Assembly: GCF_011386835.1 (NCBI RefSeq)
Contig: NC_088800.1
Span: forward strand, 38,750,001 to 38,814,000
DNA from: Chrysemys picta bellii
Lineage: Eukaryota
Reading direction: 5' to 3'
DNA length: 64,000 nucleotides
Below the pieces are notes generated by a model. The model had not been told where the DNA came from. It saw nothing but the letters and a program-made list of their open reading frames with translations, and made no database searches. Shown piece by piece: positions 46 through 56,507 of this stretch. Position 1 is the stretch's first letter; each line of letters opens with the position of its first letter. Position numbers and translations under genes: made by a program.

Positions 46-459
46 CTGCAAGGTGCTGCCACATTCATGGAGCCCAGCTAAAAAGATCACCGTGTTCTCC
101 ACAGCATTAAGGGACGTGTACTGGCAGGCAGCTGGGCCAAGGCTCAGGTCAGCAGCTTTGATCAGTCGCCCCGTCCCAAACAGATCCCTGTGCACAGTGA
201 TCACCAGCTGAGCCGCCTCACACTGCAGCATGACAGGCTGCAGTGGGGACACAGCCCTGGACTGGGAAGCATCAGCCCGAGCCCAGGGGTAGGGCTGGGC
301 AAGAGAAGGCACATGGGCATTTCTGTGAGGGGGCTCAGCCCTGGGGGTGGGTCTCCAGATGGCAGAGTCTCTCCTAGAGAAATCCCAGGGATTGTAACCA
401 GTCACCCCACTGACCACCCAGCACAGGAGAGCAAAGCCCAGGCTGCTTCTATATCCCAT
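46..459 (-). CDS. ZP3: ZP3 paralog A, exon 1 only (rest of gene lies off the left edge)
   Basis: Hand translation gives 138 open codons, [18 protein letters not shown]...[35 protein letters not shown]...LHECGSTLQ, ending at a CAG|GTAAGG donor. Same 414-nt size as exon 1 of B-E. Completeness of the gene cannot be judged. Confidence 0.93.
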
Positions 460-504
460 CCTGCCTGCCTGCAGCAAACCCAGCATGGAGAGAAACTCCT
501 GCTC

Positions 505-680
505 TGGGCCCTTTATACCCTGCAGCTAAAGGCAGCCCACAGCTGCCCCAGGTAATTAACATGCTCCTCTAATCTCCAGACAGCTGGGGCCCAATCACAC
601 ATGCTGCTCACACCCTGGAGCAAGGAAACAGGAGGACCAATGGGAATCTGCCCCACCTGTTGGTCAGTTCATCAGCTGCA
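505..680 (-). promoter_or_regulatory. ZP3-A proximal promoter: TATAAA (512-517), E-boxes CAGCTG (540-545, 581-586, 673-678), CCAAT (591-595), E-box CACCTG (654-659)
   Basis: Motifs read directly; the same order and spacing recur upstream of B, C and D, and partly E. Confidence 0.7.
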
Positions 681-789
681 GTTTGGGAAATTCCTGCTCT
701 GTTTCATTCAATGGAAGGCTAAGGGTGGGCTCCACCACAAAGGGACCCAGGCCCCTCAATCCCAGATTTAGGCCTGTAAATCCTGGGTT

Positions 790-1320: not shown

Positions 1321-1325
1321 GACAC

Positions 1326-4315: not shown

Positions 4316-4318
4316 TCA

Positions 4319-4603: not shown

Positions 4604-4629
4604 TCAGGTATGAGGGATCCTTACCTGTG

Positions 4630-8445: not shown

Positions 8446-11400
8446 TCAGGCACTAGAACGGCTGCATCTTCTATATACAAGTAACCCCAGAGTAATGAAG
8501 GCCAGTGCAATGGCAGCTGCCACAGAGATCAGCCCAACTGTAGAAGAGAATCCTACAAGAGGAAGAACACATCGTTAAGACTGCAAGTAGTTGCTTTTCC
8601 AACTACCTCTCCAAAAAAATCCACCACAGACTTGCTGGGTACATTAGTGAAGGCCACAGTTAATAAAATTGAGGGGATATTTGAGCTATATTGAAGGGTT
8701 GTGTTTTTTGAAGTGGTTGCAGGTCTCAGGCACAACTGGTTTCCCAGCAGATAAGCCCAGGCGCCAATGTTTGACTGGCTCTGGTTGGACTATCTAAACA
8801 AGGAGCCCTCCTTGAGCCTTGTTGACTCATTCCTAACATCCCCTCCTTGGACTAAGGGATTCTTACAGCTGAATTTGCAAGACCCATTTCTTCCATCCTT
8901 TAGATCAACTTTTCCAAGTCAACCTAATGTAGATTAGTAAGTGACAATAGAGGCACCATGTGACTTGTTCACAAGAACTAGTTACCCTCTGAGGCAGCGT
9001 TCTCTGCTTCCATTTGATCGGTTGAGACATCCCTGGATCCTCGATAAGCATCAAAGATGAATAGAGGTCCTACCACAACATCAGCCTCAGCTTCCCTCAT
9101 GAAGGGGTCATCTGTATTGGTGAGAGAAGCACTGCTAGAGCACCAATACATGTCAGGTTAGTCTCATCCATCCCATTTTGGGTGGAAGATCCCCTAGGAA
9201 GAGTCCATTGGAGTAAGCCAGACATCTTCCCAAGTGAAGTGGGACAGAACCTACCATGCCTGGAGGCCACATCTCTCTGGAAGCGCCTCCCTGGCCATCT
9301 GTCCAGAGGTCTGACTCTCCCAGACTGTCCAGCCAGCCCACAGTTCCCAGTCTCACAGCACCTGCAGATGTCTCTGGTGCCTTCCACTGGAGACCAGCTG
9401 CAACAGAACAGGAACAATCTACAGTGAAGTGTTCTGTTCTAGGCTGCCCATCACTCCCCTGGTGGGGTTCTAGTCTACTCACATGTTGCCTGCTTTGTTG
9501 AAGGAACAAGCCTTGTTCAAGGGATCTGGGGCTTGCTCAGCTGCAGTGACTTTCAGATGGCAGGTGATGTAGATCTGGAGGGGAAGTGGGAAGAGGGGTT
9601 AGTACCATCCCGGGGACACTAACACCTACTTAGCTGGGTGGGAGGGGAAAGAGGAGGGGGAAAACCGACTTGGAGCAGAAATATGGAGCTCACCAAGTTC
9701 CTAGCATCTCCTGCAAACCTGAACACATCCACCATGAACTGCAGCGTGTCCTGCCTGGGCCTGGGGGATATGAAGGCTGAGGTGGTGTCATCTGATCTCC
9801 CATCCACCAGGCATCTAGACACAAGAACCAAGGTTCAGTGAGAGTCCCTGATCGGTCTTGTTTTAGACTAGAAAGGGCTCCCAGCTCTTACCCATTGAAG
9901 TCAATGACAGCATAGCGGGGAGAGGAGTCCCTGTCTGGGGTCAGAGTGGCCACACAGCTGTCCACAAAGAGCCTCAGAGCCACATGGTTCCCAGTGCTGA
10001 CATCAGCTTGGATATGCATGACCTCCCCCAGCTGGAATCCATTGGAGGGTCTCTCAGCACTCCAGTCATCTGCAAGGCAAGCTCACAGTGAGCAGGACAG
10101 ACAGGCAAGCAGGGCGGGGCTCCCCTGAAGGCTCCTCCCACCCACCTACCATTCATCAGGCGCAGGGAGAAACCCAGCCTCTCCTCAGCAGACAGGGTGG
10201 AGTGGAAGGGAACCCACGTTGGCTTGATGGCTTTACTGCTCACGTTGTCCTTCCTGTGAGAGGAGCAAACCTCAGTCACTGAGCCAGATCCCACAACAGG
10301 GTCTGAATGGGAGGGAGGAGACCTGAGCATCTCAGACACTCACCTCGGGTAGTGACACTCAATGGGAATCACAGCCGGATTGGTTCTTAGGATCACTGGG
10401 TTGCTGGCAGGGGTGGGGTTATAGTTCAGGCTTGTGCTGTAAACTAGAGAGTCTGGGGTCATCTGAGAAGAACCAGACATGGAAGGGTTAACACTAGACT
10501 ACATGGCATTTGAAAGTTACTTAAGATGAGCCCAAGAACAAGCCTCAGCCAGATGGAAACAAGAGCTCAAGTTTTCCAACAAGTGCCCAGTCAACTGGCA
10601 ACTGCCTTTGGAAGGGCTGGACACTAGAAGCGGGGGGATTGCAGCGCTCAATCTGCTAGAGCAGCCTTAGGAATACTAGAGCCACTGTAGTGCCATTTTA
10701 CACAGCTCTACTCACTAGGTTCCTCTGTGCAGGTTATGAAGGAATATCAGACTGTAAAACCCCCAAGTTTCTATCAGCTTCTTTCAGGTGAATTTTGACC
10801 AGGGATTAAGGAAGCCAATTGTCTGTCCCTTTCCCTCCTACAGCTTATGTGGAGCTCAGGCTAACGCCAACCAGTGTATTCAGTTGAGTGGTCCTGTCCG
10901 TAGAGTCTCCAGACAAGCTTTCAACAGGGTGTGTGTGTGTCCAGAAATAAAGTGTCTGAGCCACCAGACCACCCGCTTCAGCCTTCACTCATGAGCCTGC
11001 TTTAGGAGCCAAGCTGGGCAGAATTCTATGACTGGTGCAGGAGATTGAAGGCTAGGAAGAAGAACCCAGGAAAAACAGGGAGCTTGTCAATGTCAGGAAC
11101 AAAATGCCACCCACTGTTTTCTCCCCCACCCCATTTTTAACCCTATCAGACAAGACAGGGGTAGTGATGCTAGGGATCAGTAGGGGCTCCTGGTGTGCAT
11201 GAATCCTTACCTGCAAGGTGCTGCCACATTCATGGAGCCCAGCTGTAAAAGTCATTGTGTTCTCTGCAGCATTAAGGGACGTGTACTGGCAGGCAGCCGG
11301 GCCAAGGCTCAGGTCAGAAGCTTCGATCAGTCGCCCCGTCCCAAACAGATCCCTGTGCACAGCGATCACCAGCTGAGCCGCCTCACACTGCACCATGACA

Positions 11401-11624
11401 GGCTGCAGTGGGGACACAGCCCTGAGCTGGGAAGAATCAACCCGAGCCCAGGGGTAGGGGTGGGCAAGAGAGGGCACATGGGCTCTTCTGCGAGGGGGCT
11501 CAGCCCTGGGGGTGGGTCTCCAGATGGCTGAGTCTCTCCTAGAGAAATCCCAGGGATTGTAACCAGTCACCCCACTGACCACCCAGCAAAGGAGAGCAAA
11601 GCCCAGGCTGCTTCTTTGTCTCAT
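8446..11624 (-). CDS. ZP3: ZP3 paralog B, complete, 9 exons, 467 aa
   Basis: Exons 11211-11624, 10344-10462, 10150-10253, 9892-10069, 9694-9814, 9483-9574, 9255-9397, 8986-9111, 8446-8552 (414/119/104/178/121/92/143/126/107 nt; total 1404, in frame, all GT-AG). Signal peptide, ZP-N, PTWVPF linker, ZP-C with [17 protein letters not shown] ([10 protein letters not shown]) and TM helix. Confidence 0.96.
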
Positions 11625-11669: not shown

Positions 11670-11845
11670 TGGGGCCTTTATACCCTGACCTAGAGCCAGG
11701 TGACAGCTGCCCCAAGTAATTAACACCCTCCCCAATCTGCAGTCAGCTGGGGCCCAATCACACCCACTGCCCACACTCTGGTCCAGGGAAATAAGAGGAC
11801 CAATGGGAATCAGCCCCACCTGTTGGTCAGTTCACCAGCTGCAGT
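11670..11845 (-). promoter_or_regulatory. ZP3-B proximal promoter (TATAAA 11677-11682, CAGCTG 11704-11709, CCAAT, CACCTG 11817-11822)
   Basis: Same motif order and spacing as A, C and D. Confidence 0.7.
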
Positions 11846-11983: not shown

Positions 11984-12162
11984 GGGGGGTGGGATAGCTC
12001 AGTGGTTTGAGTATTGGCCTGTTAAACCCAGGGTTGTAAGTTCAATCCTTTAGGGGGCCACTTAGGGATCTGGGGCAAAATCAGTTCTGCTAGTGAAGGC
12101 AGGGGGCTGGACTCAATGACCTTTCAGGGTCCCTTCCAGTTCTATGAAATAGGTATATCTAA
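11984..12162 (+). mobile_element. tRNA-derived SINE with CR1-like 3' tail (tortoise Pol III/SINE type)
   Basis: Head GGGATAGCTCAGTGG...AGTTCAATCC and tail GGCTGGACTCAATGACCTTTCAGGGTCCCTTCCAGTTCT; absent from the paralogous site near 820. Confidence 0.85.
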
Positions 12163-15986: not shown

Positions 15987-18900
15987 TCAGGCACTAGAAC
16001 GGCTGCATCTTCTGTATACAAGTATCCCCAGAGTAATGAAGGCCAGTGCAATGGCAGCTGCCATGGAGATCAGCCCAGCTATAGAAGAGAATCCTACAAG
16101 AGGAAGAACACATTATTAAAACTGCAAGTAATTGCTTTTCCAACTACCTTTCCAAAAATCCACCATGGACTTGCTGGATATGTTAGTGACAGGCACAGTT
16201 AATAAAGTTGGGGATTTTATTTGAGCTATATTGAAGGGTTGTTGTTTTTTTTGAAGTGGTTTTTAGCCATACCAACCGGGTAATGTTTACTAGAAGTGGC
16301 TAGAGTAGGAGATCAGCACCTGTTTATAAATCCCACTAGATAATAGGTTGCAGGTCTCCTGCCACAACTGGTGTCCCAGCAGATAAGCCCAGGCTGCAAT
16401 GGGTGACAGTCCTATGTTTGGCTGGCTCTGGTTGGACCATTTCAATGAGGAGCCCTCCTTGAGTCTTGTTGACTCATTACACTCACTCTCGGATTCTTAC
16501 AGCTGACTTTGCAAGACCCATTTCTTCCATCCTTTAGATCAGCTTTTCCAAGCCAACCTAATGTAGATTAATAAGTGACAAGAGGCACCATGTGACTTGT
16601 TCTTCACTAGAACTAGTTACCCTCTGAGGTGGCCTTCTCTGCTTCCATTTGATCAGTTGAGACATCCCTGGATCCTCGATAAGCATCAAAGATGACTAGG
16701 GGTCCTACCACAACATCAGCTTCCCTCACCAAGGGGTCACCTGTATTGGTGAGAGAAGCACTACTAGAGAACCAATACATGTCAGGTTAGTCTCATCCAT
16801 CCCATTTTGGATGGAAGATCCCCTAGGAACAGTCTGTTGAAGTAAGCCAGACATCTTCCCAAGTGAAGTGGGACAGAACCTACCATGCCTGGAGGCCACA
16901 TCTCTCTGGAAGCGCCTCCCTGGCCATCTGTCCAGAGGTCTGACTCTCCCAGACTGTCCAGCCAGCCCACAGTTCCCAGTCTCACAGCACCTGCAGATGT
17001 CTCTGGTGCCTTCCACTGGAGACCAGCTGCAACAGAACAGGAACAATCTACAGTGAAGTGTTCTGTTCTAGGCTGCCCATCACTCCCCCGGTGGGGTTCT
17101 AGTCTACTCACATGTTGCCTGCTTTGTTGAAGGAACAAGCCTTGAACAAGGCATCTGGGGCTTGCTCAGCTGCAGTGACTTTCAGATGGCAGGTGATGTA
17201 GATCTGGAGGGGAAGTGGGAAGAGGGGTTAGGACCATCCCAGGGGACACCAACACCTACTTAGCTGGGGGGGGGGGAGAAGAGGGGGAAAACCGACTTGG
17301 AGCAGAAATATGGAGCTCACCAAGTTCCTAGCATCTCCTGCAAACCTGAACACATCCACCATGAACTGCAGTGTGTCCTGCCTGGGCCTGGGGGATATGA
17401 AGGCTGAGGTGGTGTCATCTGATCTCCCATCCACCAGGCATCTAGACAGAAGAACCAAGAGTCAGTGAGAGTCCCTGATCAGTCTTGTTTTAGACTAGAA
17501 AGGGCTCCCAGCTCTTACCCATTGAAGTCAATGACAGCATAGCGGGGAGAGGAGTCCCTGTCTGGGGTCAGGGTGGCCACACAGCTGTCCACAAAGAGCC
17601 TCAAAGCCACATGGTTCCCAGTGCTGACATCAGCTTGGATATGCATGACCTCCCCCAGCTGGAATCCATTGGAGGGTCTCTCAGCACTCCAGTCATCTGC
17701 AAGGCAAGCTCACAGTGAGCAGGACAGACAGGCAAGCAGGGTGGGGCTCCCCTGAGGTCTCCTCCCACCCACCTACCATTCATCAGGCGCAGGGAGAAAC
17801 CCAGCCTCTCCTCAGCAGACAGGGTAGAGCTGAAGGGAACCCACGTTGGCTTGATGGCTTTGCTGCTCACATTGTCCTTCCTGTGAGAGGAGCAAACCTC
17901 AGTCACTGAGCCACATCCCACAACAGGGTCTGAATGGGAGGGAGGGGACCTGAGCATCTCAGACACTCACCTGGGGTAGTGACACTCAATGGGAATCACA
18001 GCTGGATTCGTTCTCAGGATCACTGGGTTGCTGGCAGGGGTGGGGTTATAGTTCAGGCTTGTGCTGTAAACCAGGGAGTCTGGGGTCATCTGGAAGGAGG
18101 GGGACATTGGACAGATTAAGGGGAAGTAGTTAATATTGAGCTTAACAGCTCTCAGCTGAAGACAGTTCTCTAGTCCACAGGAAGTGGGCATGTCTTTCAA
18201 TAAGTGGTTCCTGCGCTCATTCTGCTGGAGCAGCCATCAGAATACTGGAGCTACCATAGTGACCTCTTCTGCATGACTCTGCTGACTGTGGCACTTGCCT
18301 TAGAATAGGCACAGAGGAAACCAGAGTAACCCCCAAGTACAACATACTCACACCACTACTCAAATTGAGCTACCAGAGTACAGAAACACATTCAGCTGCC
18401 CCCTTCCTGTCTACTGTCTTTGCAGAGCTCAGAGATTTCAGGGTGCCAGACTCCATTTTACTGGCAGTAAAATTCCCTGGCTTGGACTAGGCACAAGTGT
18501 CCAGTGGTGAAATCTGACAAAACCACCACAGCTCCCTCCCCCCGCATGCTCTTAAGCCTGCTTTTGGAACACATGAAATAATTCAACTATAAGGAGACTG
18601 ACGACTAAGAAACAGACCCCCCCAAAAAATAGCCAGTTGGTCAGTAACTGAGCCAAGGCCCTGCACAGTACTGTTACCCTTCTTAAGCCACACAAATAGG
18701 AAGCTCCTGGCTTATATGAAGCGGCCTTACCTGCAAGGTGCTGCCACATTCATGGAGCCCAGCTGCAAAGGTCACTGTGTTCTCTGCAGCATTAAGGGAC
18801 GTGTACTGGCAGGCAGCTGGGCCAAGGCTCAGGTCAGCAGCTTTGATCAGTTGCCCTGTCCCAAACAGATCCCTGTGCACAGTGATCACCAGCTGAGCCT

Positions 18901-19144
18901 CCTCACACTGCACCGTGACAGGCTGCCGCAAGGACACAGCCCTGAGCTGGGAAGAATCAACTCGAGCCCAGGGGTAGGGCTGGGCAAGAGAGGGCACATG
19001 GGCTCTTCTGCGAGGGGGCTCAGTCCTGGGGGATGGTCTCCAGATGGCTGAGTCTCTCCTAGAGAAATCCCAGGGATTGTAACCAGTCACCCCACTGACC
19101 ACCCAGCACAGGAGAGCAAAGCCCAGGCTGCCTCTATATCCCAT
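15987..19144 (-). CDS. ZP3: ZP3 paralog C, complete, 9 exons, 465 aa
   Basis: Exons 18731-19144, 17971-18089, 17777-17880, 17519-17696, 17321-17441, 17112-17203, 16884-17026, 16621-16740, 15987-16093 (total 1398 nt, in frame, GT-AG). Exon 8 is 6 nt shorter than in B. Confidence 0.96.
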
Positions 19145-41838: not shown

Positions 41839-41944
41839 CCTAGTTAGGCAGCTTGCTGACCTGGGGACAGACCTTTTTCACCAATGGCATTTTAACCTAA
41901 TCAGGTTCTAGCACAGAAGGTGGTTTAAGTAGTTTACGCTAGAC

Positions 41945-43008: not shown

Positions 43009-43047
<39 letters not shown>

Positions 43048-43269: not shown

Positions 43270-43932
43270 GAAAAAATCTCATTGAAATGCGCCCCCAGGG
43301 ACAAAGTCAGGCAAGCCAAGGCAAGGCCTGAGTTAAAACTGGCAAAAAATATGAGTGTCAAGAAGGGGTTCTACAAATATACTAGCCAAAAAAGGAAGCT
43401 CAGGGACCTGGGCCTGCTGCTCACTGGGGGGGCGGGGGGGGGTGAGCTGGTAATAGAAGATAGGAAAGCAGAGCTGTTCACTGCTGCCTTTCTTCAGTCT
43501 TCACACAAAAAACCAACATGATCAGCTGACTAGCGAAGTTACCATAGACAATAACGTTGAAGAAATGCAGCTCTGGCTAAGTAAAGAACACATCAGAGAT
43601 CTGACTAATTTGAGCAAATTCAAGTAGGGTCTGATGTTATGCGCCCCAGGTTGTGAAAGAAATCCCAGAGCCACCGGTGATATTTGTCCACTCAGGGCTG
43701 ACAGGAGAGGTCCTGGCTGACTGAAGAGCTAACATGGTTCCTCTTTAAAAAGGAGGAGCTGAGGAACTCTATAGATCCTCAGCCTGACCTGGATACCTGG
43801 GAAGCTACTAGAGCAATGCATAAAATATTCCATTTGCATGTAGCTAGAGGATGAAGGGGCAAGACTAGCAGCCAGCATGGATTTACCAAGAACAAATCAT
43901 GTCAAACCAGCTTGATTTCCTTCTTTGACAAG
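43270..43932 (+). mobile_element. CR1 LINE ORF2, left half (host of the Gypsy insertion)
   Basis: RDKVRQAKA...KGFYKY (ORF 43282-43521) through SCQTSLISFFDK, cut at 43932. Confidence 0.8.
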
Positions 43933-44245
43933 TGTGACGGAGCAGGGCGGATTTGACCTGGGAATGTAGCCTGGGAGTTACATTGAGCTACCTGAGCTGT
44001 AACCTGAGCCAGGAGGGGGGTGGGGGAAGTGACACCTTCTGCCCGGGAGACTGAACAAAGGAGAGGAGGAGCAGAGGGGAGGGGAGAGAGAGCTGCTGGA
44101 GGGATTTGGGGATTTTTCAGTTTGGGCTGGGAGGTGCAACGCAGGGAACCCAAGCTGGGGTCTAAGCTCCCTGCGCTCCCCAAGAAGACTTGATTGAGGG
44201 GTCCTGGTTGTATCTATGAGCTCTGCTGTAGACTGTGTTCCTGTT

Positions 44246-45209
44246 AATAACAGAACACCACTAGCTGTGACCTTCAGCCCCCAACTAAAACCTCTCCAGC
44301 GCATTATCAGAGATCTACAACCTATCCTGAAAGATGATCCCTTACTCTCACAGATCTTGGGAGACAGACCTGTCCTCGCTTACAGACAACCCCCCAACCT
44401 AAAGCAAATACTCACCAGCAACCACACATCACTGAACAAAACCACTAACCCAGGAACCTATCCTTGTAACAAACCCCGATGCCAACTCTGTCCACATATC
44501 TATTCAAGTGACATCATCATAGGACCTAATCACATCAGCCATACCATCAGGGGCTCGTTCACCTGCACATCTACCAATGTGATATATGCCATCATGTGCC
44601 AGCAATGCCCCTCGGCCATGTACATTGGCCAAACCGGACAGTCTCTACGCAAAAGAATTAATGGACACAAATCTGACATCAGGAATCAAAATACTCAAAA
44701 ACCAGTGGGAGAACACTTTAACCTGTCTGGTTATTCAGTGACAGACCTGCGGGTGGCTATATTACAACAGAAAAACTTCAAAAACAGACTCCAACGAGAG
44801 ACTGCTGAGCTGGAATTGATATGCAAACTAGACACAATCAACTCAGGATTGAATAAGGACTGGGAATGGCTGAGCCATTACAAACATTGAATCTATCTCC
44901 CCTTGTAAGTATGCTCACACTTCTTATCAAACTGTCTGTACTGGGCTATCTTGATTATCACTTCAAAAGTTTTTTTTCTCTTAATTAATTGGCCTCTCAG
45001 AGTTGGTAAGACAACTCCCACCTGTTTATGCTCTCTCTATGTGTGTATATATATCTCCTCAATATATGTTCCATTCTATATGCATCCGAAGAAGTGGGCT
45101 GTAGTCCATGAAAGCTTATGCTCTAATAAATTTGTTAGTCTCTAAGGTGCCACAAGTACTCCTGTTCTTCTTTTTGCGGATACAGACTAACACGCTGCTA
45201 CTCTGTAAC
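44246..45209 (+). mobile_element. Penelope-like element (GIY-YIG ORF to 44890 plus pLTR) embedded in the Gypsy 5' LTR
   Basis: About 215-aa GIY-YIG frame differs by 2 aa from the copy at 22995-23680; ends GCTACTCTGTAAC; no TSD found. Confidence 0.92.
45082..45121 (+). ncRNA. Candidate minimal hammerhead ribozyme within the Penelope part of the Gypsy 5' LTR
   Basis: GCAT-CCGAAGA-A-GTGGGC-TGTA-GTCCAT-GAAA-GCTT-ATGC. Confidence 0.5.
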
Positions 45210-45410
45210 CCCTGGGAGTGTGTGACCAGTGAGAAGGACTTTTGCAGTAACAGGGTCCCCTGGGGGATCACAGCGAGCAGTCCCGGGGTGGAGGAGGCTG
45301 CAGCTCGACCCTGGCAGGGAGGTGGTGACCTGAAGAAGGGCTGGCACACTAGGGGTCCCCCGGAATGGTGGAAAGCGGAGAGCACAGGCCGGCGAGTGGC
45401 CAGCAGGAGG

Positions 45411-47570
45411 ATGTATGCTAAACGCCTCAAGAGCCACCTGGTGGAGCTGTGCAGGCAGAGGGGGCTGCGCATTGGGAGGTCCACCAAAGAACAGCTCATT
45501 GCCCAGCTGGAGGAGAGGGATCGCTTGGATGAACCGAGCCCTGTCCCTGAGGGCAGCCGCCCGGCGGATGCAGCGTGGGCCCCGGGGCCTGACATGGCTG
45601 AGAGGGGTCAGACTGCTGCCGAGGACATCCCGAGACCCTGCCTACCTATACCTAGAGGAGGGGTTGGGGGAAGCCCAGCAAATACCGAGGGCACCCTGAC
45701 CCCGGCGGCCAGCAGGGGATCGTCCCGGCGGAGCTCCCCGTCCCGGGAGCTGATGCGACTGGAATATGACAGGGAGCTGAGATTGAAAGAGCTCGAGCTC
45801 GAGTTAAGGCAGCAAGAACTGAAGCAGGAACGGGAAGAGAAGGAGAGACAACGTCAGCATGAGCGGGACCAACGTCAACATGAGCGGGAAGAACGGGAAA
45901 AACAGCGTCAGCATGAGGAGAACGAACGTCAGCATGAGCGGGACCAATGTCAGTATGAGCTGGAACTGGCGAGGCTGAGGAGCAGTGGGGCCCCGGCTGC
46001 GGTGAGCGAGGGGGGACCCAAGACTGCAAAGAGCTTTGATAAGTGCTTCCTGGCCCAGCGTAAGGAGGGGGAGGACATGGATACCTTCCTGACGGCCTTT
46101 GAGAATACCTGCGAGCTGCTCCAGGTTGACCCTGCAGACAGGCTCCAGTTTCTCATTCCCTCACTGGACCCCACAGCCAGGGAGGTGTACAGCTGACTGA
46201 AAGGGGCGGAGACAGGGGACTACGAACTGTTCAAAAAGGCCCTGCTCTGCGAGTTTGGGCTGACCCCTGAGATGTACCGGCAAAGGTTCCGGAATCAGCG
46301 TAAAACCCGCAAGGTCACATACCCACAACTAGCCAACCGGGTGCAGGGGTATGCCCGCAAGTGGACGGCTGGGGCCCAAACTATAGAGGACCTGCTTGAC
46401 CTAGTCGTACTGGAGCACGTGTATGAGCAGTGCCCATCCGACCTGAGGCGATGGTTGATGGACCAAAAGCCAGAGAACCCGCAGCATGCAGGCCAGCTGG
46501 CCGACGAGTTTGTGAACAGTCGGGCAGGGGATAACCGGGAGGAGTCCCAAAGGAACAGGCCCACCACAACGCAAAGAGAGAGTCATCATGGGACCTCCCA
46601 GCGAGGAAATAGGGAGAATCCCCACCAAAGGGGAACATCCAGCGTCAGGTCCATCCGTCCTGCTCGAGGGGACCCACGGGACATGGGCTGCTATCACTGT
46701 GGCCAGAGAGGCCACATACGGGCCCAGTGCCCCAGGCTCAGGGACAGGCTGAGCAGACCAAACCCACAGAGGGTTGACTGGGTAGAGGCCCAGCCGGGCG
46801 AGAGGCAGCATTCCCAGGGAAGGGGAGCTGGCAAAGTACCACCTGCTAAGGAGGGAGGAGAGCTCCAGGCCAGCTCCTCTGGAGGGCTGGATGCTCCAGA
46901 CTCAGGGTTTTCGGTTTATACGGTGGACGCGGGGCTGTCCCTCCGCAGTGAGTGCCTTGTTCCCCTGGAGGTGGATGGGAGGAAGGTCAATGGATACTGG
47001 GATACGGGCGCAGAGGTGACGTTGGCCCAGCCCGAGGTGGTGGCCCCAGATTGGGTGGTGCCTGACACCTACCTAACCCTGACAGGGGTGGGTGGGACCC
47101 CATTCAAGGTGCCTGTGGCGAGGGTACACCTGAAGTGGGGGGCCAAGGAGGGTCCCAAGGATGTGGGGGTGCACCACCATTTGCCCACTGAGGTGTTGAT
47201 GGGGGGGGGACCTGGAGGACTGGCCAAGCGACCCTCCGGGTGCCCTGGTCGTGACCCGTAGTCAGAGCCGGCAAGGGGCACTGCACCCTGACCTTGGGGA
47301 CGGTACCTTGCCCAAGGCGCAGGACCCTAACCGGGTGGGGAGGGACCACCCAGGGACACAGCTCAGGGGGGCTACGGCCTCAGACCCAGCCCGTGAGAGA
47401 GAGCAGGTGCCCAGCCCTGTCCCAGCTGCTGAGTTCCAGGCCGAGTTGCAGAGGGATCCCTCCTTGCAGAAGATAAGGGACCTGGCGGACCTCAGGGCAG
47501 TACAGACCATGGGGAGAGGCTCCTGTGAGAGAAGGGGTTCCTGTACTGAGAATGGGCTCCCCCAGGGGAA
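45411..47570 (+). pseudogene. Gypsy gag-protease, disrupted
   Basis: ATG 45411, coiled coil, SCAN-like domain (YRQRFR...LVVLEH...AGQLADEF), CCHC knuckle CYHCGQRGHIRAQC, protease DTGA; in-frame TGA at 46194-46196 and frameshifts near 47205 (G run) and about 47530. Confidence 0.88.
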
Positions 47571-50279
47571 GTGGAGTTGTGGGGGATCAGGAGGCAGCTG
47601 GTGGTTCCCCAGAAGTTTCACCACAAGCTATTGTACCTGGCCCATGACATCCCTCTCGCAGGGCACCAGGGAATCTGGCGCACCAGGCAGAGGCTGCTAC
47701 AGAACTTTTACTGGCCTGGGGTCTTTACCAACGTCCGACAGTACTGCCGATCCTGTGACCCCTGTCAGAGGGTGGGGAAGGCCCGGGACAAGGGGAAAGC
47801 AGCGTTGAGGCCTTTACCCATCATACAGGAGCCTTTCCAGAAGGTGGCTATGGACATAGTGGGACCTCTCAGCAAGACGACCCGGTCAGGGAAGAAATAC
47901 ATTCTGGTGGTGGTAGATTTCGCCACCTGCTACCCCGAGGCAGTGCCCTTATCATCCATCGAAGCGGACACTGTGGCAGATGCGTTGCTGACCATTTTCA
48001 GCCGAGTGGGGTTTCCCAAGGAAGTCTTAACGGACCAAGGGTCCAACTTCATGTCGGCCCTACTCCGGTGCTTGTGGGAGAAATGCGGGGTCCGGCACAA
48101 CTGGGCCTCCGCGTATCACCCCCAATCCAACGGGCTGGTGGAGAGGTTCAACGGGACACTAAAGATGATGCTAAAAACATTTATGAACCAGCACCCACAG
48201 GACTGGGACAAGTACTTACCTCACCTGCTGTTCGCGTACAGGGAGGTACCCCAGGAGTCTACCGGGTTTTCGCCTTTCGAACTGTTATATGGAAGGCGGG
48301 TAAGGGGGCCCCTGGACCTGATGAGAGACGAATGGGAGGGAAAGGCCACTCCCGATGGAGAGTCGGTGGTGGAGTATGTCCTGACCTTCCGGGAACGACT
48401 TGCCGAGCTCATGGGCCTGGCCAGGGAGAATCTGTCCCGAGCCCAGAAGAAGCAGAAGGTCTGGTATGACCGCACGGCGCGGGCCCGCGCCTTTGTCACC
48501 GGGGATCAGGTGATGGTCCTCATCCCCGTGAGGAAGAACAAACTCCAGGCCGCATGGGAAGGGCCCTTCAAGGTTGTCAAGCAACTAAATGAGGTGAACT
48601 ATGTGGTGGAGCTGTCGAACCAGGCGCACCACCGCCGGGTGTACCATGTGAACATGATGAAGCCATATTATAACAGGGGGGATGTGGTGTTGGCCGTGTG
48701 TGGGCACTGGGAGGAGCAGGGAGATGACCCTTTAGTAGATCTATTCCCTGGGACAAGAGCTGGTTTCCCCCTGGAAGCAATTCCCCTCTCTCATCAGCTG
48801 ACCCCGGCCCAGCAAGCTGAGATCAGAGGGGTGCTGCATCTGTACCGACGGCTGTTTTCCAACCAGCCTGGACGCACTAATCTGACTGTCCACCGGGTGC
48901 AGACAGGATCACACCCGCCTATAAAATGCTCCCCCTTCCGAGTCACAGGGAAAACTGCTCAGGACCTGGAAAGAGAGGTCAATGACATGCTGGCTTTGGG
49001 GGTGATCCAGCTGTCCTCCAGTCCTTGGGCCTCGCTGGTGGTGCTGGTCCCCAAAAAGGACGGATCAATCCGGTTCTGTGTGGACTATCGGAAGCTCAAT
49101 GCCATCACTGTAGCCGATGCCTGCCCCATGCCCAGGTCTGACGAGCTCCTAGACAAGCTGGGAGGCGCTCGGTACCTTACCACCATGGATCTTACAAAGG
49201 GCTATTGGCAAGTGCCGCTGGATGCAGATGCCATGCTGAAATCGACCTTTATCACCCCTCTGGGGCTCTATGAGTTCCTGACCCTGCCTTTCGGCCTCAA
49301 GGGAGCGCCGGCCACCTTCCAGCGCCTGGTGGATCAGCTACTGAGGGAGATGGAGAGTTTTGCCGTGGCGTATATTGATGACATCTGTGTCTTTAGCCAG
49401 ACCTGGGAGGACCACGTGTCCCAGGTTAGACAAGTGCTGGACCGACTCCAGGAGGCTGGGCTGACCGTAAAAGCTGAGAAGTGCAAGGTGGGGATGGCTG
49501 AAGTATCCTACCTAGGTCACCGGGTGGGGAGCGGCTGCCTAAAGCTGGAACCAGCCAAAGTGGAGGTGATCAGAGACTGGCCTGCCCCCCAAACCAAAAA
49601 GCAGGTCCAAGCCTTTATTGGGATGGCGGGATACTATCGAAGGTTCGTGCCCCACTTTAGCGCCATAGCCGCCCCCATCACTGAGCTGTGCAAGAAGGGG
49701 AAGCCAGACAAGGTGGTCTGGACCGAGGAGTGCCAGAAAGCGCTCCGGGCGCTGAAGGAGGCTCTGGTCAGTGGCCCAGTTCTGGCAAACCCAGACTTTG
49801 ACAAGCCCTTTTTGGTGTTCACCGACACCTCAGACACGGGACTGGGGGCGGTGTTAATGCAGGAGGATGAAAAGGGGGAGAGACACCCGATTGTGTACCT
49901 GAGCAAGAAGTTGCTACCCCGGGAGCAGAACTACGCGGCCATCGAGAAGGAATGCCTGGCCATGGTGTGGGCCCTCAAGAAACTAGAGCCATATCTCTTT
50001 GGGCGACACTTCACCGTGCACACTGACCACTCTCCTCTGACCTGGCTACACCAGATGAAAGGAACCAACGCCAAGCTCCTGAGGTGGAGCCTGCTCCTGC
50101 AGGATTATGACATGGAGGTGGTCCATGTGAAGGGGAGTGACAACCTGATAGCGGATGCGTTGTCCTGGAGAGGGGGCCCTGAACTTCCCCAGGTCACTGG
50201 TCAGAGTGACCCCGCTCAGTTCAGTCTAGAAGGGGGGAGAGGTGTGACGGAGCAGGGCGGATTTGACCTGGGAATGTAG
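47571..50279 (+). CDS. Gypsy pol segment: integrase - reverse transcriptase - RNase H, 902 open codons
   Basis: HHCC zinc finger, DIVGP...DQGSNF...ERFN integrase core, YIDD RT site, RNase H TD..D/EKE/TDH; the frame runs through the PPT into the 3' LTR. Confidence 0.93.
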   Translation: MELWGIRRQLVVPQKFHHKLLYLAHDIPLAGHQGIWRTRQRLLQNFYWPGVFTNVRQYCRSCDPCQRVGKARDKGKAALRPLPIIQEPFQKVAMDIVGPLSKTTRSGKKYILVVVDFATCYPEAVPLSSIEADTVADALLTIFSRVGFPKEVLTDQGSNFMSALLRCLWEKCGVRHNWASAYHPQSNGLVERFNGTLKMMLKTFMNQHPQDWDKYLPHLLFAYREVPQESTGFSPFELLYGRRVRGPLDLMRDEWEGKATPDGESVVEYVLTFRERLAELMGLARENLSRAQKKQKVWYDRTARARAFVTGDQVMVLIPVRKNKLQAAWEGPFKVVKQLNEVNYVVELSNQAHHRRVYHVNMMKPYYNRGDVVLAVCGHWEEQGDDPLVDLFPGTRAGFPLEAIPLSHQLTPAQQAEIRGVLHLYRRLFSNQPGRTNLTVHRVQTGSHPPIKCSPFRVTGKTAQDLEREVNDMLALGVIQLSSSPWASLVVLVPKKDGSIRFCVDYRKLNAITVADACPMPRSDELLDKLGGARYLTTMDLTKGYWQVPLDADAMLKSTFITPLGLYEFLTLPFGLKGAPATFQRLVDQLLREMESFAVAYIDDICVFSQTWEDHVSQVRQVLDRLQEAGLTVKAEKCKVGMAEVSYLGHRVGSGCLKLEPAKVEVIRDWPAPQTKKQVQAFIGMAGYYRRFVPHFSAIAAPITELCKKGKPDKVVWTEECQKALRALKEALVSGPVLANPDFDKPFLVFTDTSDTGLGAVLMQEDEKGERHPIVYLSKKLLPREQNYAAIEKECLAMVWALKKLEPYLFGRHFTVHTDHSPLTWLHQMKGTNAKLLRWSLLLQDYDMEVVHVKGSDNLIADALSWRGGPELPQVTGQSDPAQFSLEGGRGVTEQGGFDLGM

Positions 50280-50587
50280 CCTGGGAGTTACATTGAGCTA
50301 CCTGAGCTGTAACCTGAGCCGGGGGTGGGGTGGGGAAAGTGACACCTTCTGCCCGGGAGACTGAACAAAGGAGAGGAGGAGCAGAGGGGAGGGGAGAGAG
50401 CTGCTGGAGGGTTTGGAACGTCTTCAGTTTTGGGCTGGGAGGTGCAACGCAGGGAACCCCAAGCTGGGGTCTAAGCTCCCTGTGCTTCCCCAAGAAGACT
50501 TGATTGAGGGGTCCTGGTTGTATCTACGAGCTCTGCTGTAGACTGTGTTCCTGTTAATAACAGAACAGCACTAGCTGTCACCTTCAG

Positions 50588-52545: not shown

Positions 52546-52675
52546 GGCTATCTCAGCTTGTCTCCTTCCGCACTTGCCCATAGAACAGAAGACCCCTCCC
52601 TCACCCACTAGGAAATCACCACTGACCAGATGAGACATTGTGTAGTTTTATTTTGTGTTAGACAAAAGGTGCCAG

Positions 52676-55600
52676 TCACACAACAGTTCCAGCAATGGCA
52701 CAGCTGTGGTTTTTGTATATGAAGCAGATGGCCAGAATCATGGAGGCCAAAGCTATGGCAGCTGCCACCAAGGTCAGTCCCAGCTCCAGCCCAGGATTCT
52801 CCTCTGCACCTACAGGAGAAGGTCAGTAGTTAGAACCAGAATTGGTGCTTAGTGGTGGGGGTGCACCACAGATAAGGGAATGCTGTGGTAGATGAAGTGG
52901 GAAGTTTTGTTTGTGCTGTTCAGCTATTGCTCAGCTTTGTGGACTTGATCCTCCATATTGATTCTGTTGACTAGTGTTTTAGTCAAGACCAACTGGAGTA
53001 AACAGGAATCTGGATTCCAGAGTTGTGGGTTTTAGGCCACCCTTTGGTGCAACCAATCATCTGAGCTGGGGGGGGGCGGGGGCGCACGGGGAAGATGGGC
53101 TGCATTGCTGATAGTCTAGATCAGGGGTCAGCAACCTTTCAGAAGTGATGTGCCGAGTCTTCATTTATTCACCCGAATTTAAGATTTCATGTGCCAGTAA
53201 TACATTAACATTTTTAGAAGCTCTTTCTTTAAGTCTAATAAATAAATTAATGGAGATATCCCATCTCCTAGAACTGGAAGGGACCTTGAAAGGTCATAGA
53301 GTCCAGCCCCCTGCCTTCACTAGCAGGACCAAGTACTGATTTTGCCCCAGATCCCTAAGTGGCCCCCTCAAGGATTGAACTCACAACCCTGGGTTTAGCA
53401 GGCCAATGCTCAAACCACTGAGCTATCCCTCCCCCCCTAATATATAAACTAAACTATTGTTGTATGTTTAAGAAGCTTCATTTAAAATTACATTAAAATG
53501 CAGAGACCCCTAGACTGGTGGCCAGGACCTGGGCAGTGTGAGTGCCACTGAAAAAAAAAAAAAAAAAAAAAAAGACCACCACAGCTTGCGTGCCGCCTTT
53601 GGCACACGTGCCATAGGTTGCCTACCCCGGTCTAGAAATTTCCCTCAGACACTGCAGAGAACTCCCCTGGATTTAGTTTGCTCTTTTGCTTGCCAGCTGC
53701 TGCCCACAGGCTGGATAGCACTAAGACTCGTCTTTGAAAGGGACATTATTCAGGGTTCCCTTGAGGTGGAAGGCATCCCCTCTCCCCTGAAAGGGGGGTA
53801 ACATATGCTCCCAGGGTGCATGCCTGGTTCTTATAACCTAGACAATACCTGGTGCGGCTGCCTTCCCTGCTTCCATTCGATCTTCTACAACACCCCTGGA
53901 TTCTTGATAGGCATCAAGGATGATTAGGGGTCCTACCACAACATCAGCCTCTTCTACCCTCACTGAGAAGTCACCTGTATTGAAGAGAGGAGTTACCAGA
54001 GAACCCATCAACATTACTGCTCTTCTCATTTTAGAAGGAAGACAACCAAAGAACAGTGGGTTTTACTAAGAGAACCATTTCTTTGGGTTCAACCTCCTAT
54101 TAGCTACAAACGATGTACAGCCTACCATGTCTGGAGGCCACATCTCTCTGGAAGTGCCTGCCTGGCCGTCTGTCCAGAGGGCTGCCTCTCCCAGAATGTC
54201 CTCCAAGTAATGCACAATTTCCAGTCTCACAGCACCTGCAGATGTCTCTGGTGCCTTCCACTGGAGACCAGCTGGAACAGAAGAAGGGGCAGGGTCGCTC
54301 ACAGTAAGTCTTGTCCTCTCCATGCTGCTGATCCCACCAGCCCTCAAACCACCACCTCCATGGGGTTCTACTCCAGCTACTCACATGTTGCCTGCTTTGT
54401 TGAAGGAACAAGCCTTGTTCAAGGGATCTGGGGCTTGCTCAGCTGCAGTGACTTTCAGATGGCAGGTGATGTAGACCTGGAGGGGAAGTGGGAAGAGGGG
54501 TTAGGACTATCCCAGGGGACACTAACACCTGCTTAGCTTGGGGGGGGGGGGGAACCCAACTTCAAGCAGAAGTCTGGGAGCTCACCAAGTTCCTGGCATC
54601 TCCTGCAAACCTGAACACATCCACCATGAACTGCAGCGTGTCCTGCCTGGGCCTGGGGAATATGAAGGCTGAGGTGCTGTCATCTGATCTCCCATCCACC
54701 AGGCATCTACACACAAGAACTCTGGTTAGTAAGATCCCCACAGACTCAAGGTAGATTCTAGACTAGAAAGGGCTGCCACCTCTTACCCATTGAAGTCAAT
54801 GACAGCATAGTGGGGAGAGGAGTCCTTGTCTGGGGTCAGGGTGGCCACACAGCTGTCCACAAAGAGCCTCAAAGCCACATGGTTGCCAGTATGGACATCA
54901 GCTTGGATATGCATGACCTCCCCCAGCTGGAATCCATTGGAGGGTCTCTCAGCACTCCAGTCATCTGCAAGACAAGCTCACAGTAAGCAGGACAAACAGG
55001 CAGGGCTGGGCTCAGCTCCCCTGAAGGCACCTCCTACCTACTCTTCATCAGGCGCAGGAAGAAACCCAGCCTCTCCTCAGCAGAGAGGGTGGAACTGAAG
55101 GGAACCCACGTTGGCTTGATGGCTTTGCTGCTCACGTTGTCCTTCCTGTGAGAGGAGCAAACCTCAGTCACTGAGCCAGATCCCACAACAGGGACTGAAT
55201 GGGAGGGAGAGAACCTGAGCATCTCAGACACTCACCTGGGGTAGTGACACTCAATGGGAATCACAGCTGGACTGGTTCTCAGGATCACTGGGTTGCTGGC
55301 AGGGGCAGGGTTATAGTTCAAGCTCGTGCTGTAAATCAGGGAGTCTGGGGTCATCTGAGAAGAACCAGACATGGAAAGGTTAACAGCACACAATTGACAT
55401 AAAACTACAGTACTAGGTTCAGCAAGACCTAGACAGATATTTCCTATTAACAGAAAGTCTTCCAGCACATGCACAACTCATGAAACCACCAACCATCGCT
55501 GGAAGGTAATAGAAGCATAAGAGCTTTTTGAGCTTACTCCCCCAGAATGACTGCCTGGGGACTACTGATGGGCACTGTAGGGCCTTGTTCTGCACAGCTG

Positions 55601-56507
55601 TGGTCACCACAGCTACTGCTTCTAGTACTGTCCAACTATTTTGTAGGATAAGCTGTTTTCCCTTACAGGACAGCAGCATTCTGGAAGACAGTTGACATCT
55701 AGCACCCTTTGGCCACTCCAGTTCTGCTGTCTGTCATCTCTCTCTGGGAGCAGTGAAGCTGTTGTGGCTTCTTGAAATAGGGACTCCCAGTGGAGGAGGA
55801 GATTGCAGGGGCATGGCTCAGCTCACTCTTCTCTCAAGAGAAGATGTCACTCAAAGGGGAAGCTCTGACAGCAGCTGCCTCTTTAGCACTGCAAGCAGGG
55901 GAAACCAATAACTCTAGCTATGGACCCAGGCCATTAGGCATCCTAGATGTTAATATCAAACTAGCCTAGACATGCCCATCACCCACATACAGCACCATGC
56001 ATCACAGAAATTTAGCTGGGGCCTGCACAATGGGAGGGATCAAGATACTCATCTGACCCACTGGAGCACCAGGCTTGTATGAAGCTGTCTTACCTGTAAG
56101 GTGCTGCCACATTCATGGAGCCCAGCTGTAAAAGTCACTGTGTTCTCTGCAGCATTAAGGGACGTGTACTGGCAGGCGGCCGGGCCAAGGCTCAGGTCAG
56201 CAGCTTTGATCAGTCGCCCCGTCCCAAACAGATCCCTGTGCACAGTGATCACCAGCTGAGCCTCCTCACACTGCGCCGTGACAGGCTGTAGTGGGGACAC
56301 AGCCCTGAGCTGGGAAGAATCAACTCGAGCCCAGAGGTAGGGCTGGGCAAGAGAGGGCACATGGGGTTGTCTGCGAGGGGGCTCAGCCCTGGGGGATGGT
56401 CTCCAGATGGCTGAGTCTCTTCTAGAGAAATCCCAGGGATTGTAACAGGTCACCCCACTGACCACCCAGCACAGGAGAGCAAAGCTCAGGCTACCTCTAT
56501 GCCCCAT
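52676..56507 (-). CDS. ZP3: ZP3 paralog E, complete, 9 exons, 477 aa
   Basis: Exons 56094-56507, 55236-55354, 55042-55145, 54787-54964, 54586-54706, 54385-54476, 54126-54271, 53849-53974, 52676-52809 (total 1434 nt, in frame, GT-AG). Exon 7 is one codon longer. Confidence 0.95.
53122..53629. mobile_element. hAT MITE (same family as 41945-42255) in ZP3-E intron 8
   Basis: TIR-like ends and TSD GTCTAGAT/GTCTAGAA. Confidence 0.85.
53252..53437 (-). mobile_element. tRNA-derived SINE (tortoise Pol III/SINE type) nested in the hAT MITE
   Basis: Reverse complement of the 11984-12162 family. Confidence 0.87.

What the first reader, a model, noticed from the sequence alone, without database searches (positions are those of the whole stretch)
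46..56507. Tandem array of at least five ZP3 co-orthologs, four demonstrably intact
Seen: four 9-exon genes with conserved exon sizes, open frames, TATA boxes and poly(A) signals, plus an intact fifth exon 1; the array may extend leftward. Established: ZP3 is a core egg-coat subunit and sperm ligand, typically single-copy at its locus in mammals and birds; the sequences closely resemble chicken ZP3 as recalled. Inference: a lineage-specific expansion maintained for dosage (large yolky eggs) or for egg-coat diversification.
Basis: partly seen in the sequence, partly recalled or inferred. Interest (0 to 1): 0.7.

Follow-up and report, generated by a model that had tools for sequence, protein, structure and literature searches.

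The report
Five-gene ZP3 egg-coat array, painted turtle
The window holds a real head-to-tail array of intact ZP3 egg-coat genes in the painted turtle, but public annotation already lists it, all major turtle lineages sampled share it, and it predates living turtles rather than being a recent expansion.

Summary
Four complete 9-exon ZP3 genes lie on the minus strand (G1 11624-8446, G2 19144-15987, G3 32830-26259, G4 56507-52676). Exon 1 of a fifth gene (G0, 459-46) sits at the left edge. All 32 introns are GT-AG and all frames are open. Each gene has a TATAAA 58-59 nt before the ATG, and the four complete genes have an AATAAA 20-35 nt after the stop.

The window is Chrysemys picta bellii CM062327.1:38,750,001-38,814,000. 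All five genes are already called there as ZP3-like. G0, G3 and G4 match database proteins exactly.

Assembled contigs from four small, probably RNA runs carry all eight G4 exon junctions.

The expansion is not species-specific. Three tail-defined gene types (G0; G1/G2; G3/G4) each have a side-necked-turtle member, and the loggerhead has the same gene order. A single Chrysemys clade is rejected (p-AU 4e-40).

Exons 2-7 are homogenised by gene conversion. Exons 1, 8 and 9 are not. G0-type genes lack the transmembrane tail in all turtles checked.

A 2026 paper already tabulates 8 ZP3 genes in the red-eared slider and 3 in chicken. This is ordinary and largely known. The conversion mosaic and the tail-less paralog are modest additions.

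The parts
46..459 (-). G0 exon 1 (138 codons: signal peptide, N-terminal stretch, start of ZP-N). The other 8 exons lie left of the window.
   Evidence: Runs from the ATG at 459 to a GT donor after 46. It is 100% identical to residues 10-147 of P0336 (XP_065415670.1, Chrysemys picta bellii). The full G0 model from L003 equals that protein minus 9 N-terminal residues.
512..558 (-). G0 proximal promoter: TAATTA, then CAGCTG, then TATAAA (517-512).
   Evidence: Five-promoter alignment. The same core occurs in sea-turtle orthologs.
8446..11624 (-). G1, complete 9-exon ZP3 gene, 467 aa. Exons: 11624-11211, 10462-10344, 10253-10150, 10069-9892, 9814-9694, 9574-9483, 9397-9255, 9111-8986, 8552-8446.
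   Evidence: all introns GT-AG, open frame. A 476-aa gene (467 + 9) is called at this place in the public annotation. TATAAA at 11682-11677 and AATAAA at 8411-8406.
15987..19144 (-). G2, complete 9-exon ZP3 gene, 465 aa. Exons: 19144-18731, 18089-17971, 17880-17777, 17696-17519, 17441-17321, 17203-17112, 17026-16884, 16740-16621, 16093-15987.
   Evidence: It is 98.7% identical to XP_005311667.2. A 474-aa gene (465 + 9) is called here. TATAAA at 19202-19197 and AATAAA at 15952-15947.
26259..32830 (-). G3, complete 9-exon ZP3 gene, 476 aa, with long introns 1 (2135 bp) and 8 (2381 bp). Exons: 32830-32417, 30281-30163, 30073-29970, 29893-29716, 29638-29518, 29387-29296, 29207-29065, 28899-28774, 26392-26259.
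   Evidence: It is 100% identical to residues 10-485 of P0294 (XP_042717992.2). Pfam ZP-N + ZP-C. TATAAA at 32889-32884 and AATAAA at 26239-26234.
52676..56507 (-). G4, complete 9-exon ZP3 gene, 477 aa. Exons: 56507-56094, 55354-55236, 55145-55042, 54964-54787, 54706-54586, 54476-54385, 54271-54126, 53974-53849, 52809-52676.
   Evidence: It is 100% identical to residues 10-486 of P0299 (XP_023967915.3). All 8 exon junctions are found in contigs of four runs. Gapless match to chicken ZP3 3NK3. TATAAA at 56565-56560 and AATAAA at 52652-52647.
29056..30312 (-). Gene-conversion tract in G3 (about 30 bp before exon 2 to about 8 bp past exon 7). Its partners are G1 9246-10493 and G2 16875-18093.
   Evidence: 94.1-94.5% identity over about 1.25 kb, introns included. 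Exon 7 is 100% identical and introns 3, 4 and 6 are 95-99% identical. The adjoining intron 7 is 45-51% identical and exons 8 and 9 are 64-77% identical. The break is visible in the alignment.
43932..50587 (+). LTR retrotransposon in the G3-G4 spacer. It is not part of any ZP3 gene.
   Evidence: LTRs at 43932-44277 and 50242-50587 are 94.6% identical. The ORFs carry SCAN/zinc knuckle/protease, integrase, RT and RNase H domains, plus a GIY-YIG ORF.

Best explanation
The window is Chrysemys picta bellii chromosome CM062327.1, 38,750,001-38,814,000. It holds most of a head-to-tail array of ZP3 genes, all on the minus strand. In order of transcription they are G4, G3, G2, G1 and G0. A decayed sixth copy lies beyond G0.

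Each intact gene encodes a standard ZP3 precursor. It has a signal peptide, a turtle-specific N-terminal stretch, ZP-N, a linker, and ZP-C with the ZP3-type cysteines. After these come a basic cleavage site (RRFQR in G1-G3), an external hydrophobic patch (DVVVGPL) and, in G1-G4, a transmembrane helix.

By analogy with chicken and mouse ZP3 (inferred, not shown here), each precursor is cleaved at the basic site. This removes the patch and the anchor and lets the mature module polymerise into the egg coat (the inner perivitelline layer).

The array is old. Three types defined by their last two exons already existed before side-necked and hidden-necked turtles split. They are the G0 type without an anchor, the G1/G2 type ending in RRCSRSSA, and the G3/G4 type with IYKNHS. 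G3 and G4 split before sea turtles and pond turtles diverged.

Since then, repeated gene conversion has kept exons 2-7 and their short introns nearly identical among neighbours. Exon 1 and its promoter flank, intron 1, and exons 8-9 have escaped it. The copies therefore yield very similar mature subunits that differ mainly in the N-terminal stretch and in the cleaved propeptide and anchor.
For: - Identity of the locus: L003 and L001 overlap the window base for base.
- Gene models. Three models equal public proteins exactly. All five genes are called in the public annotation with products of 453, 476, 474, 485 and 486 aa.
- ZP3 nature: Pfam ZP-N + ZP-C only. Chicken ZP3 crystal chain 3NK3 aligns at E = 1.5e-156 with no gaps. 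13 cysteine columns (12 in the ZP module, one in the signal peptide), one N-glycan sequon and the cleavage site all align with chicken.
- Transcription: contigs of runs X1, X6, X7 and X5 (four studies) carry all eight G4 junctions exactly at the model boundaries. Several variant letters in those contigs are the states of G0-G3, which hints that other copies are transcribed too.
- Age: careful tree with the G0 type at 100/99, the G1/2 type at 96/91 and G3+G4 at 99/98, each including Emydura. AU tests. Diagnostic tails in Emydura and Pelodiscus. Same order and exon sizes in Caretta and Chelonia.
- Conversion: identity mosaic. Within-species paralog dS in the core is 0.05-0.19, against ortholog dS of 0.07-0.12. 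In exons 8-9 dS between tail types is 0.30-0.78, against ortholog dS of 0.06-0.26. The core tree groups by lineage and the tail tree groups by type.
- Constraint: ortholog omega is 0.26-0.43 for every type, and 0.18-0.32 in the core.
Against: - Only G4 was laid against reads. The runs are coded, are only guessed to be RNA, and their tissue is unknown.
- Expression of G0-G3 rests on annotation, on conserved promoters and on a few paralog-state letters.
- The orthology signal comes mainly from 86 tail columns and partly from exon 1. The second AU test used a group named after I had seen the tree.
- G4 (RHFQR) and G0 (EHFQR) lack an arginine at P4 of the presumed cleavage site, so their processing may differ.
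- No protein-level evidence was available.
Confidence: 0.9

Rival explanations
1. A recent expansion specific to this species or family, kept for dosage in large yolky eggs or for egg-coat diversification.
For: Copies G1-G3 are 97-100% identical across exons 4-7 and several introns. Taken alone, that looks recent. G1 and G2 are similar along their whole length (dS 0.08). Sea turtles appear to have their own near-identical G1/2 pair (dS 0.038), so some duplication or homogenisation is indeed lineage-specific.
Against: Holding the five genes as one clade costs 524 lnL units, p-AU 3.9e-40. Exons 8-9 differ between types by dS 0.3-0.8, several times the Chrysemys-sea turtle ortholog distance. The tail motifs of all three types occur in Emydura, and a G0-like stretch before the cleavage site (the record ends before the tail motif) occurs in Pelodiscus. 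The gene order is the same in Caretta.
Confidence: 0.07
2. One working ZP3 gene plus silent or dying copies that merely look intact.
For: Reads were laid on G4 only. A truly decayed copy does exist beyond G0. A fragmentary copy sits at the second locus.
Against: All five have open frames, 32 of 32 canonical splice sites, and conserved TATA/TAATTA/CAGCTG promoters. Every type has intact orthologs with the same exon sizes in sea turtles, with omega 0.26-0.43. Neutral decay over more than 100 My would not leave that. Contigs laid on G4 carry G2-specific and G0-G3-state letters across spliced junctions.
Confidence: 0.03
3. An assembly artefact: uncollapsed haplotypes or a falsely duplicated segment.
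For: False tandem duplicates are known in bird assemblies. Feng et al. 2018 cite such a report in their reference list.
Against: The copies differ by 6-35% in exons 1, 8 and 9. Introns 1, 7 and 8 cannot be aligned between most copies. Spacers are 3.5-20 kb with different transposons. Each copy has its own ortholog in independently assembled genomes of other turtles.
Confidence: 0.01

Closest known systems
Chicken ZP3 (ZPC), crystal structures 3NK3/3NK4
   Same: The domain plan is the same, and the ZP module is very similar to G4 over a gapless 289-residue alignment (E = 1.5e-156; identity not computed). All module cysteines are conserved. So are the N-glycan sequon, the threonine in the ZP-N/ZP-C linker (AIKPTW against AIRPTW), the basic cleavage site (RRFQR against RRFRR), the hydrophobic patch and the TM helix.
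   Different: The turtle proteins carry about 21 extra residues between the signal peptide and ZP-N. There are five tandem copies instead of the one classical chicken gene. One copy (G0) has no TM helix.
RefSeq 'zona pellucida sperm-binding protein 3-like' genes of Chrysemys picta bellii and other turtles
   Same: These are the same genes. XP_065415670.1, XP_042717992.2 and XP_023967915.3 equal G0, G3 and G4. G1 and G2 are called as 476- and 474-aa products. Every turtle genome seen has several such entries on one chromosome of about 85 Mb.
   Different: The Chrysemys models start at an in-frame ATG 27 nt upstream. That ATG is absent from six of the seven other promoters checked (five of six sea-turtle genes and the far Chrysemys locus) and lies about 30 nt after the TATA box. 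The databases give no analysis of orthology or gene conversion.
Teleost ZP3/ZPC tandem arrays (for example catfish chromosomes 2 and 17, PMC13704971)
   Same: Head-to-tail local amplification of ZP3 genes. Many fish ZP proteins lack a TM domain (my recollection, not checked here), as G0 does.
   Different: Fish arrays have 12-40 copies and vary between species. The turtle array is small, old and collinear between families. That paper's Table 1 lists 8 ZP3 genes in the red-eared slider without comment.
Long-lived concerted evolution of tandem paralogs (for example mammalian gene pairs kept alike for more than 100 My, PMC2720389; listed and known to me only from its abstract)
   Same: Paralogs are more alike than orthologs in part of the gene, with sharp tract borders and flanks that have escaped.
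   Different: Here the tract coincides with the exons for the secreted mature module, and the exons for the cleaved propeptide escape.

Membership tests
ZP3 (ZPC) subfamily of egg-coat ZP proteins | One ZP module (ZP-N + ZP-C) with no extra N-terminal ZP-N repeats or trefoil domain | tested here: met
   Pfam finds only PF23344 and PF00100 in P0294 (G3), P0299 (G4), P0336 (G0) and P0282 (G2-like). G1 aligns along its whole length.
ZP3 (ZPC) subfamily of egg-coat ZP proteins | ZP3-type cysteine pattern, including the C-terminal CxCC...C subdomain | tested here: met
   13 cysteine columns (12 in the ZP module, one in the signal peptide) are shared by G0-G4, chicken ZP3 and the far paralog. Gapless alignment to 3NK3.
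ZP3 (ZPC) subfamily of egg-coat ZP proteins | Closest solved and named relatives are ZP3, not ZP1/2/4/D/AX | tested here: met
   PDB hits in order: chicken ZP3, then 8BQU (ZP3), then mouse ZP3 ZP-N. Nearly all of the 120 listed database relatives are named ZP3, ZP3-like or zona pellucida C, apart from a few unnamed or evidently misnamed records. No non-ZP3 outgroup was included in the trees.
ZP3 (ZPC) subfamily of egg-coat ZP proteins | N-terminal signal peptide | tested here: inconclusive
   A hydrophobic [13 protein letters not shown] stretch aligns with the chicken signal region. No signal-peptide predictor was available.
ZP3 (ZPC) subfamily of egg-coat ZP proteins | Consensus furin-type cleavage site followed by an external hydrophobic patch | tested here: inconclusive
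   G1-G3 have RRFQR, aligned with chicken RRFRR. G4 has RHFQR and G0 has EHFQR, neither with Arg at P4. The DVVVGPL patch is present in all five. Cleavage itself was not tested.
ZP3 (ZPC) subfamily of egg-coat ZP proteins | C-terminal transmembrane anchor | tested here: met
   G1-G4 have a 19-residue window with Kyte-Doolittle mean 2.1-2.7 (chicken 2.8). G0 does not meet this feature (0.88). Its tail-less end (...RRWHQR...) is conserved in sea turtles, emydids and Emydura.
ZP3 (ZPC) subfamily of egg-coat ZP proteins | Made by the oocyte or granulosa cells and built into the egg coat | not testable with these tools
   Spliced G4 contigs exist in four runs, but run identities and tissues are coded. 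No proteomics was available.
Tandem gene array under concerted evolution | Paralogs within a species are more alike than orthologs between species in a defined tract, while the flanks keep orthology | tested here: met
   Core dS for G1-G3 is 0.05-0.07, against ortholog dS of 0.07-0.12. Tail dS between types is 0.30-0.78, against ortholog dS of 0.06-0.26. Region trees. Lineage-wide shared states in the core, such as ERLGFSLRL in Chrysemys copies and ERLDFSLHL in all sea-turtle copies.

The most novel reading that the evidence does not exclude
The turtle ZP3 array is a system more than 200 My old. Gene conversion holds the secreted ZP module uniform. The exons that are cut off or that steer secretion (N-terminal stretch, propeptide, anchor) are kept apart and define stable types. 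One of these types has no anchor and is conserved across turtles. On this reading the copies are specialised by route or cell of secretion (oocyte, granulosa, perhaps liver) rather than by the structure of the coat.
Probability: 0.35. Interest if true: 0.5.

Novelty: already known. Interest (0 to 1): 0.3.

Why it matters
ZP3 is the core egg-coat subunit and a classic sperm-binding and speciation candidate. Work on amniotes usually treats it as a single gene. Turtles carry a stable five-gene array plus a second locus, and birds and crocodilians appear to have at least two genes. Ortholog-based selection scans and outgroup choices that pick one turtle 'ZP3' can therefore mix paralogs and conversion tracts. 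The genes themselves are already in the databases, so the value here is a tidy description, not a discovery.

Tried and rejected
- Plus-strand ORFs of the repeated block gave no Pfam or PDB hit, so the genes are on the other strand.
- A tblastn search with the C-terminal 130 residues of distant ZP3s did not find exon 9. I found it by reading frames for a hydrophobic helix and then by self-similarity.
- Long ORFs in the GC-rich spacers are transposon remnants (RT, GIY-YIG) or nothing. They are not further genes.
- Rfam and tRNA scans of the whole window found nothing.
- A words search of earlier findings for ZP3 was empty.
- Six literature searches found no analysis of turtle ZP3 paralogs. They found only a copy-number table. 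Feng et al. 2018 has no turtle in its main text.
- No listed run is on record as RNA. I treated small runs holding about a third of the words (the exon share) as RNA, and the joints bear this out.
- Spliced proteins were never typed into or sent to a search tool. G0, G3 and G4 were searched through identical database ids. G1 and G2 were searched exon by exon or handled only inside scripts, so the joined search step for those two was left out.
Full report
**What is there.**
- A self-comparison of the window shows two blocks, each repeated four or five times. A ~700-bp block lies at 1, 11166, 18703, 32386 and 56063. A ~1.3-1.8-kb block ends about 0.7 kb to the left of each of the last four.
- Plus-strand ORFs in the first block match nothing. 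The minus-strand ORFs match Pfam ZP-N and the chicken ZP3 crystal chain 3NK3.
- A library-wide HMMER search with one exon-1 ORF returned ZP3 proteins of reptiles. I used these as references for tblastn.
- From the four-gene alignment, frame reading of the 3' ends and splice-site patterns, I built four 9-exon models: G1 11624-8446 (467 aa), G2 19144-15987 (465 aa), G3 32830-26259 (476 aa) and G4 56507-52676 (477 aa). All 32 introns are GT-AG, and exon sizes are conserved.
- A fifth exon 1 (G0) occupies 459-46.
- TATAAA lies 58-59 nt before every ATG. AATAAA lies 20-35 nt after each stop of the four complete genes.

**Where it comes from, and what is already on record.**
- G3 and G4 equal Chrysemys picta bellii proteins XP_042717992.2 and XP_023967915.3 over their whole length. 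G0 exon 1 equals XP_065415670.1.
- Loci fetched for these proteins overlap the window base for base. They place it at CM062327.1:38,750,001-38,814,000 of GCA_011386835.2.
- All five genes are called there, with products of 453, 476, 474, 485 and 486 aa. Each equals my model plus nine residues from an upstream in-frame ATG.
- That ATG sits about 30 nt after the TATA box and is missing from five of the six sea-turtle genes checked and from the far Chrysemys locus.

**They are ZP3.**
- Pfam finds only ZP-N and ZP-C.
- The G4 module aligns to chicken ZP3 (3NK3) over 289 residues without a gap, E = 1.5e-156.
- Against chicken ZPC, all five copies keep the module cysteines, the single N-glycan sequon, the linker threonine and the hydrophobic patch DVVVGPL. 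G1-G3 keep the basic site RRFQR (chicken RRFRR).
- G4 has RHFQR and G0 has EHFQR.
- G1-G4 end in a strongly hydrophobic helix. G0 stops before it.
- How the precursors are cleaved and polymerised is inferred from what is established for chicken and mouse ZP3. It was not tested here.

**Transcription.**
- I used both on G4.
- Four small runs from four studies hold about a third of the words of the 4-kb stretch, which is the exon share.
- Their contigs carry joints at 52809/53849, 53974/54126, 54271/54385, 54476/54586, 54706/54787, 54964/55042, 55145/55236 and 55354/56094. These are exactly the eight introns of the model, with CT..AC ends on the plus strand. G4 is therefore spliced as modelled.
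- Many variant letters in those contigs are the states of G0-G3 at the same exon positions. One of them is G2-specific. This hints that other copies are transcribed as well. It is weak evidence.
- Tissue is unknown because the runs are coded, and they are only guessed to be RNA.

**Extent of the array.**
- Left of the window lie the rest of G0 and, 4.5-7.3 kb beyond its stop, a decayed copy. That copy has a frameshifted exon 1, pieces of exons 4-6 and nothing else.
- Nothing ZP3-like lies between G4 and the right end of the window, or 2.5 kb beyond it.
- A second locus 8.7 Mb away holds one intact gene (XP_023959786.1) and a fragment.
- The spacers in the window are transposon debris, a complete LTR element and minisatellites.

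**Age.**
- Database relatives show several ZP3-like clusters in every turtle genome, on the same chromosome.
- In a careful ML tree of 62 proteins, turtle ZP3s form one clade (91/91). It splits into the distant-locus clade and the array clade (99/89).
- The array clade holds a G0 type (100/99), a G1/G2 type (96/91) and a G3+G4 clade (99/98). G3 (99/94) and G4 (100/98) each include sea turtles.
- Each of the three types has one Emydura (pleurodire) member. The diagnostic tails (…RRWHQR; …LISVAAA…KRCSRSSA; …ICFIYKKHS…) are plain in Emydura. Pelodiscus has a G0-like stretch before the cleavage site.
- Holding the five Chrysemys genes together is rejected (p-AU 3.9e-40). Holding the three Emydura genes together is also rejected (p = 0.004, a group named after I had seen the tree).
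- In Caretta the order is G4 type, G3 type, G1/2 type..., G1/2 type, G0 type, then a COMM-domain gene. Exon sizes are the same, and the span is about 130 kb.
- The array therefore predates living turtles. It is not a Chrysemys or emydid novelty.

**Concerted evolution.**
- Identity along the genes is a mosaic. Among G1, G2 and G3, exons 4-7 are 97-100% identical and introns 3, 4 and 6 are 95-99% identical.
- G3 differs from G1/G2 in intron 7 (45-51%, unalignable) and in exons 8 and 9 (64-77%). The break comes within about 10 bp after exon 7.
- Intron 1 is unalignable in most pairs.
- Synonymous distances tell the same story. In the core, paralogs within Chrysemys are at dS 0.05-0.19, while Chrysemys-sea turtle orthologs are at 0.07-0.12. 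In exons 8-9, different types are at 0.30-0.78, while orthologs are at 0.06-0.26.
- Trees by region agree. The core groups G1/2, G3 and partly G4 by lineage, and the tail groups them by type.
- Sea-turtle copies all share ERLDFSLHL where all Chrysemys copies have ERLGFSLRL.
- The presumed mature products differ at 16-40 of 365 positions, about half of them in exon 1. The cleaved tails differ at 12-66 of 92 positions.

**Constraint.**
- Ortholog omega (NG86) is 0.26-0.43 for every type, and 0.18-0.32 in the core.
- This is purifying selection of the moderate strength usual for reproductive proteins. It argues that all types are kept in use.

**What is known.**
- The genes are annotated.
- PMC13704971 (2026), Table 1, lists ZP3 = 8 for the red-eared slider and 3 for chicken, without discussion.
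- Feng et al. 2018 (PMC6262864) reports tandem ZP1/4 copies in alligators but has no turtle in its main text.
- I found no paper on the turtle array's orthology, its conversion or the anchor-less type. The held library is incomplete.

**Verdict.** The finding is real, intact, and at least partly expressed. It is also ancient, shared across the major turtle lineages sampled (pleurodires, softshells, sea turtles, tortoises, pond turtles) and already catalogued. The idea of a lineage-specific expansion holds only at the level of turtles as a whole. The additions here are the conversion mosaic, the three old tail types and the conserved anchor-less G0.

**Procedural note.** The joined G1 and G2 proteins were used only inside scripts and were not sent to search tools.

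Noticed in passing
L003:17565-20295 (about 7.1-9.8 kb left of the window start): A sixth, decayed ZP3 copy lies downstream of G0. Exon 1 has a frameshift, exon 4 is partial, exon 5 has a 12-nt deletion and exon 6 has a 1-nt indel. Exons 2, 3 and 7-9 were not found.
   Followed up: partly
L003:10028-13002 (G0; only exon 1 is in the window, at 46-459): G0-type ZP3 ends before the transmembrane helix (…RRWHQRERRRG). The same short tail is conserved in sea turtles and emydids (437-445 aa). Emydura's 435-aa record ends at the shared …RRWHQR motif.
   Followed up: partly
L002 (CM062327.1:47,490,591-47,514,891): A second ZP3 locus lies 8.7 Mb away on the same chromosome. It has one intact 454-aa gene and an upstream fragmentary copy. 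Its clade includes softshell turtles.
   Followed up: partly
window:47571-50279 (+): The pol ORF of the LTR element has its integrase domains before RT and RNase H. This is the reverse of the usual Gypsy order, although the domains are Gypsy-like. A GIY-YIG (Penelope-type) ORF sits at 44216-44890 inside the element. A 96.6% identical inverted copy of about 1 kb overlapping that ORF lies at 22670-23639.
   Followed up: partly
window:53136-53671: A repeat in G4 intron 8 reaches contig word depths of up to 2x10^5 in all four runs laid. Related pieces lie at 11984-12160 and 41939-42085. It gave no Rfam or tRNA match.
   Followed up: partly
window:56508-56534 and the same place in G0-G3: The in-frame ATG 27 nt upstream, which the public Chrysemys models use as the start, is ATA or GTA in five of the six sea-turtle genes checked and GGC at the far Chrysemys locus. 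An X1 contig nevertheless runs from exon 1 past the TATA box, so some transcripts may start further upstream.
   Followed up: partly
window:35517-36386 and 60869-61084: A GC-rich minisatellite (units of about 80-177 bp) and a 79-bp tandem repeat (2.7 copies) lie in the spacers.
   Followed up: no
L004, L006 (Caretta caretta OZ222934.1:47.74-47.88 Mb): The loggerhead array spans about 130 kb between the G4-type and G0-type genes, against about 59 kb in Chrysemys. It may hold more copies. A COMM-domain gene flanks it beyond G0.
   Followed up: no
window:512-558, 11677-11722, 19197-19243, 32884-32930, 56560-56605: A TAATTA motif, a CAGCTG E-box and TATAAA are conserved in order and spacing in the five Chrysemys promoters (G3 has CAACTG in place of the E-box). 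Most sea-turtle promoters and the far locus share them. They look like homeobox and bHLH sites of oocyte regulators, which is inference only.
   Followed up: partly
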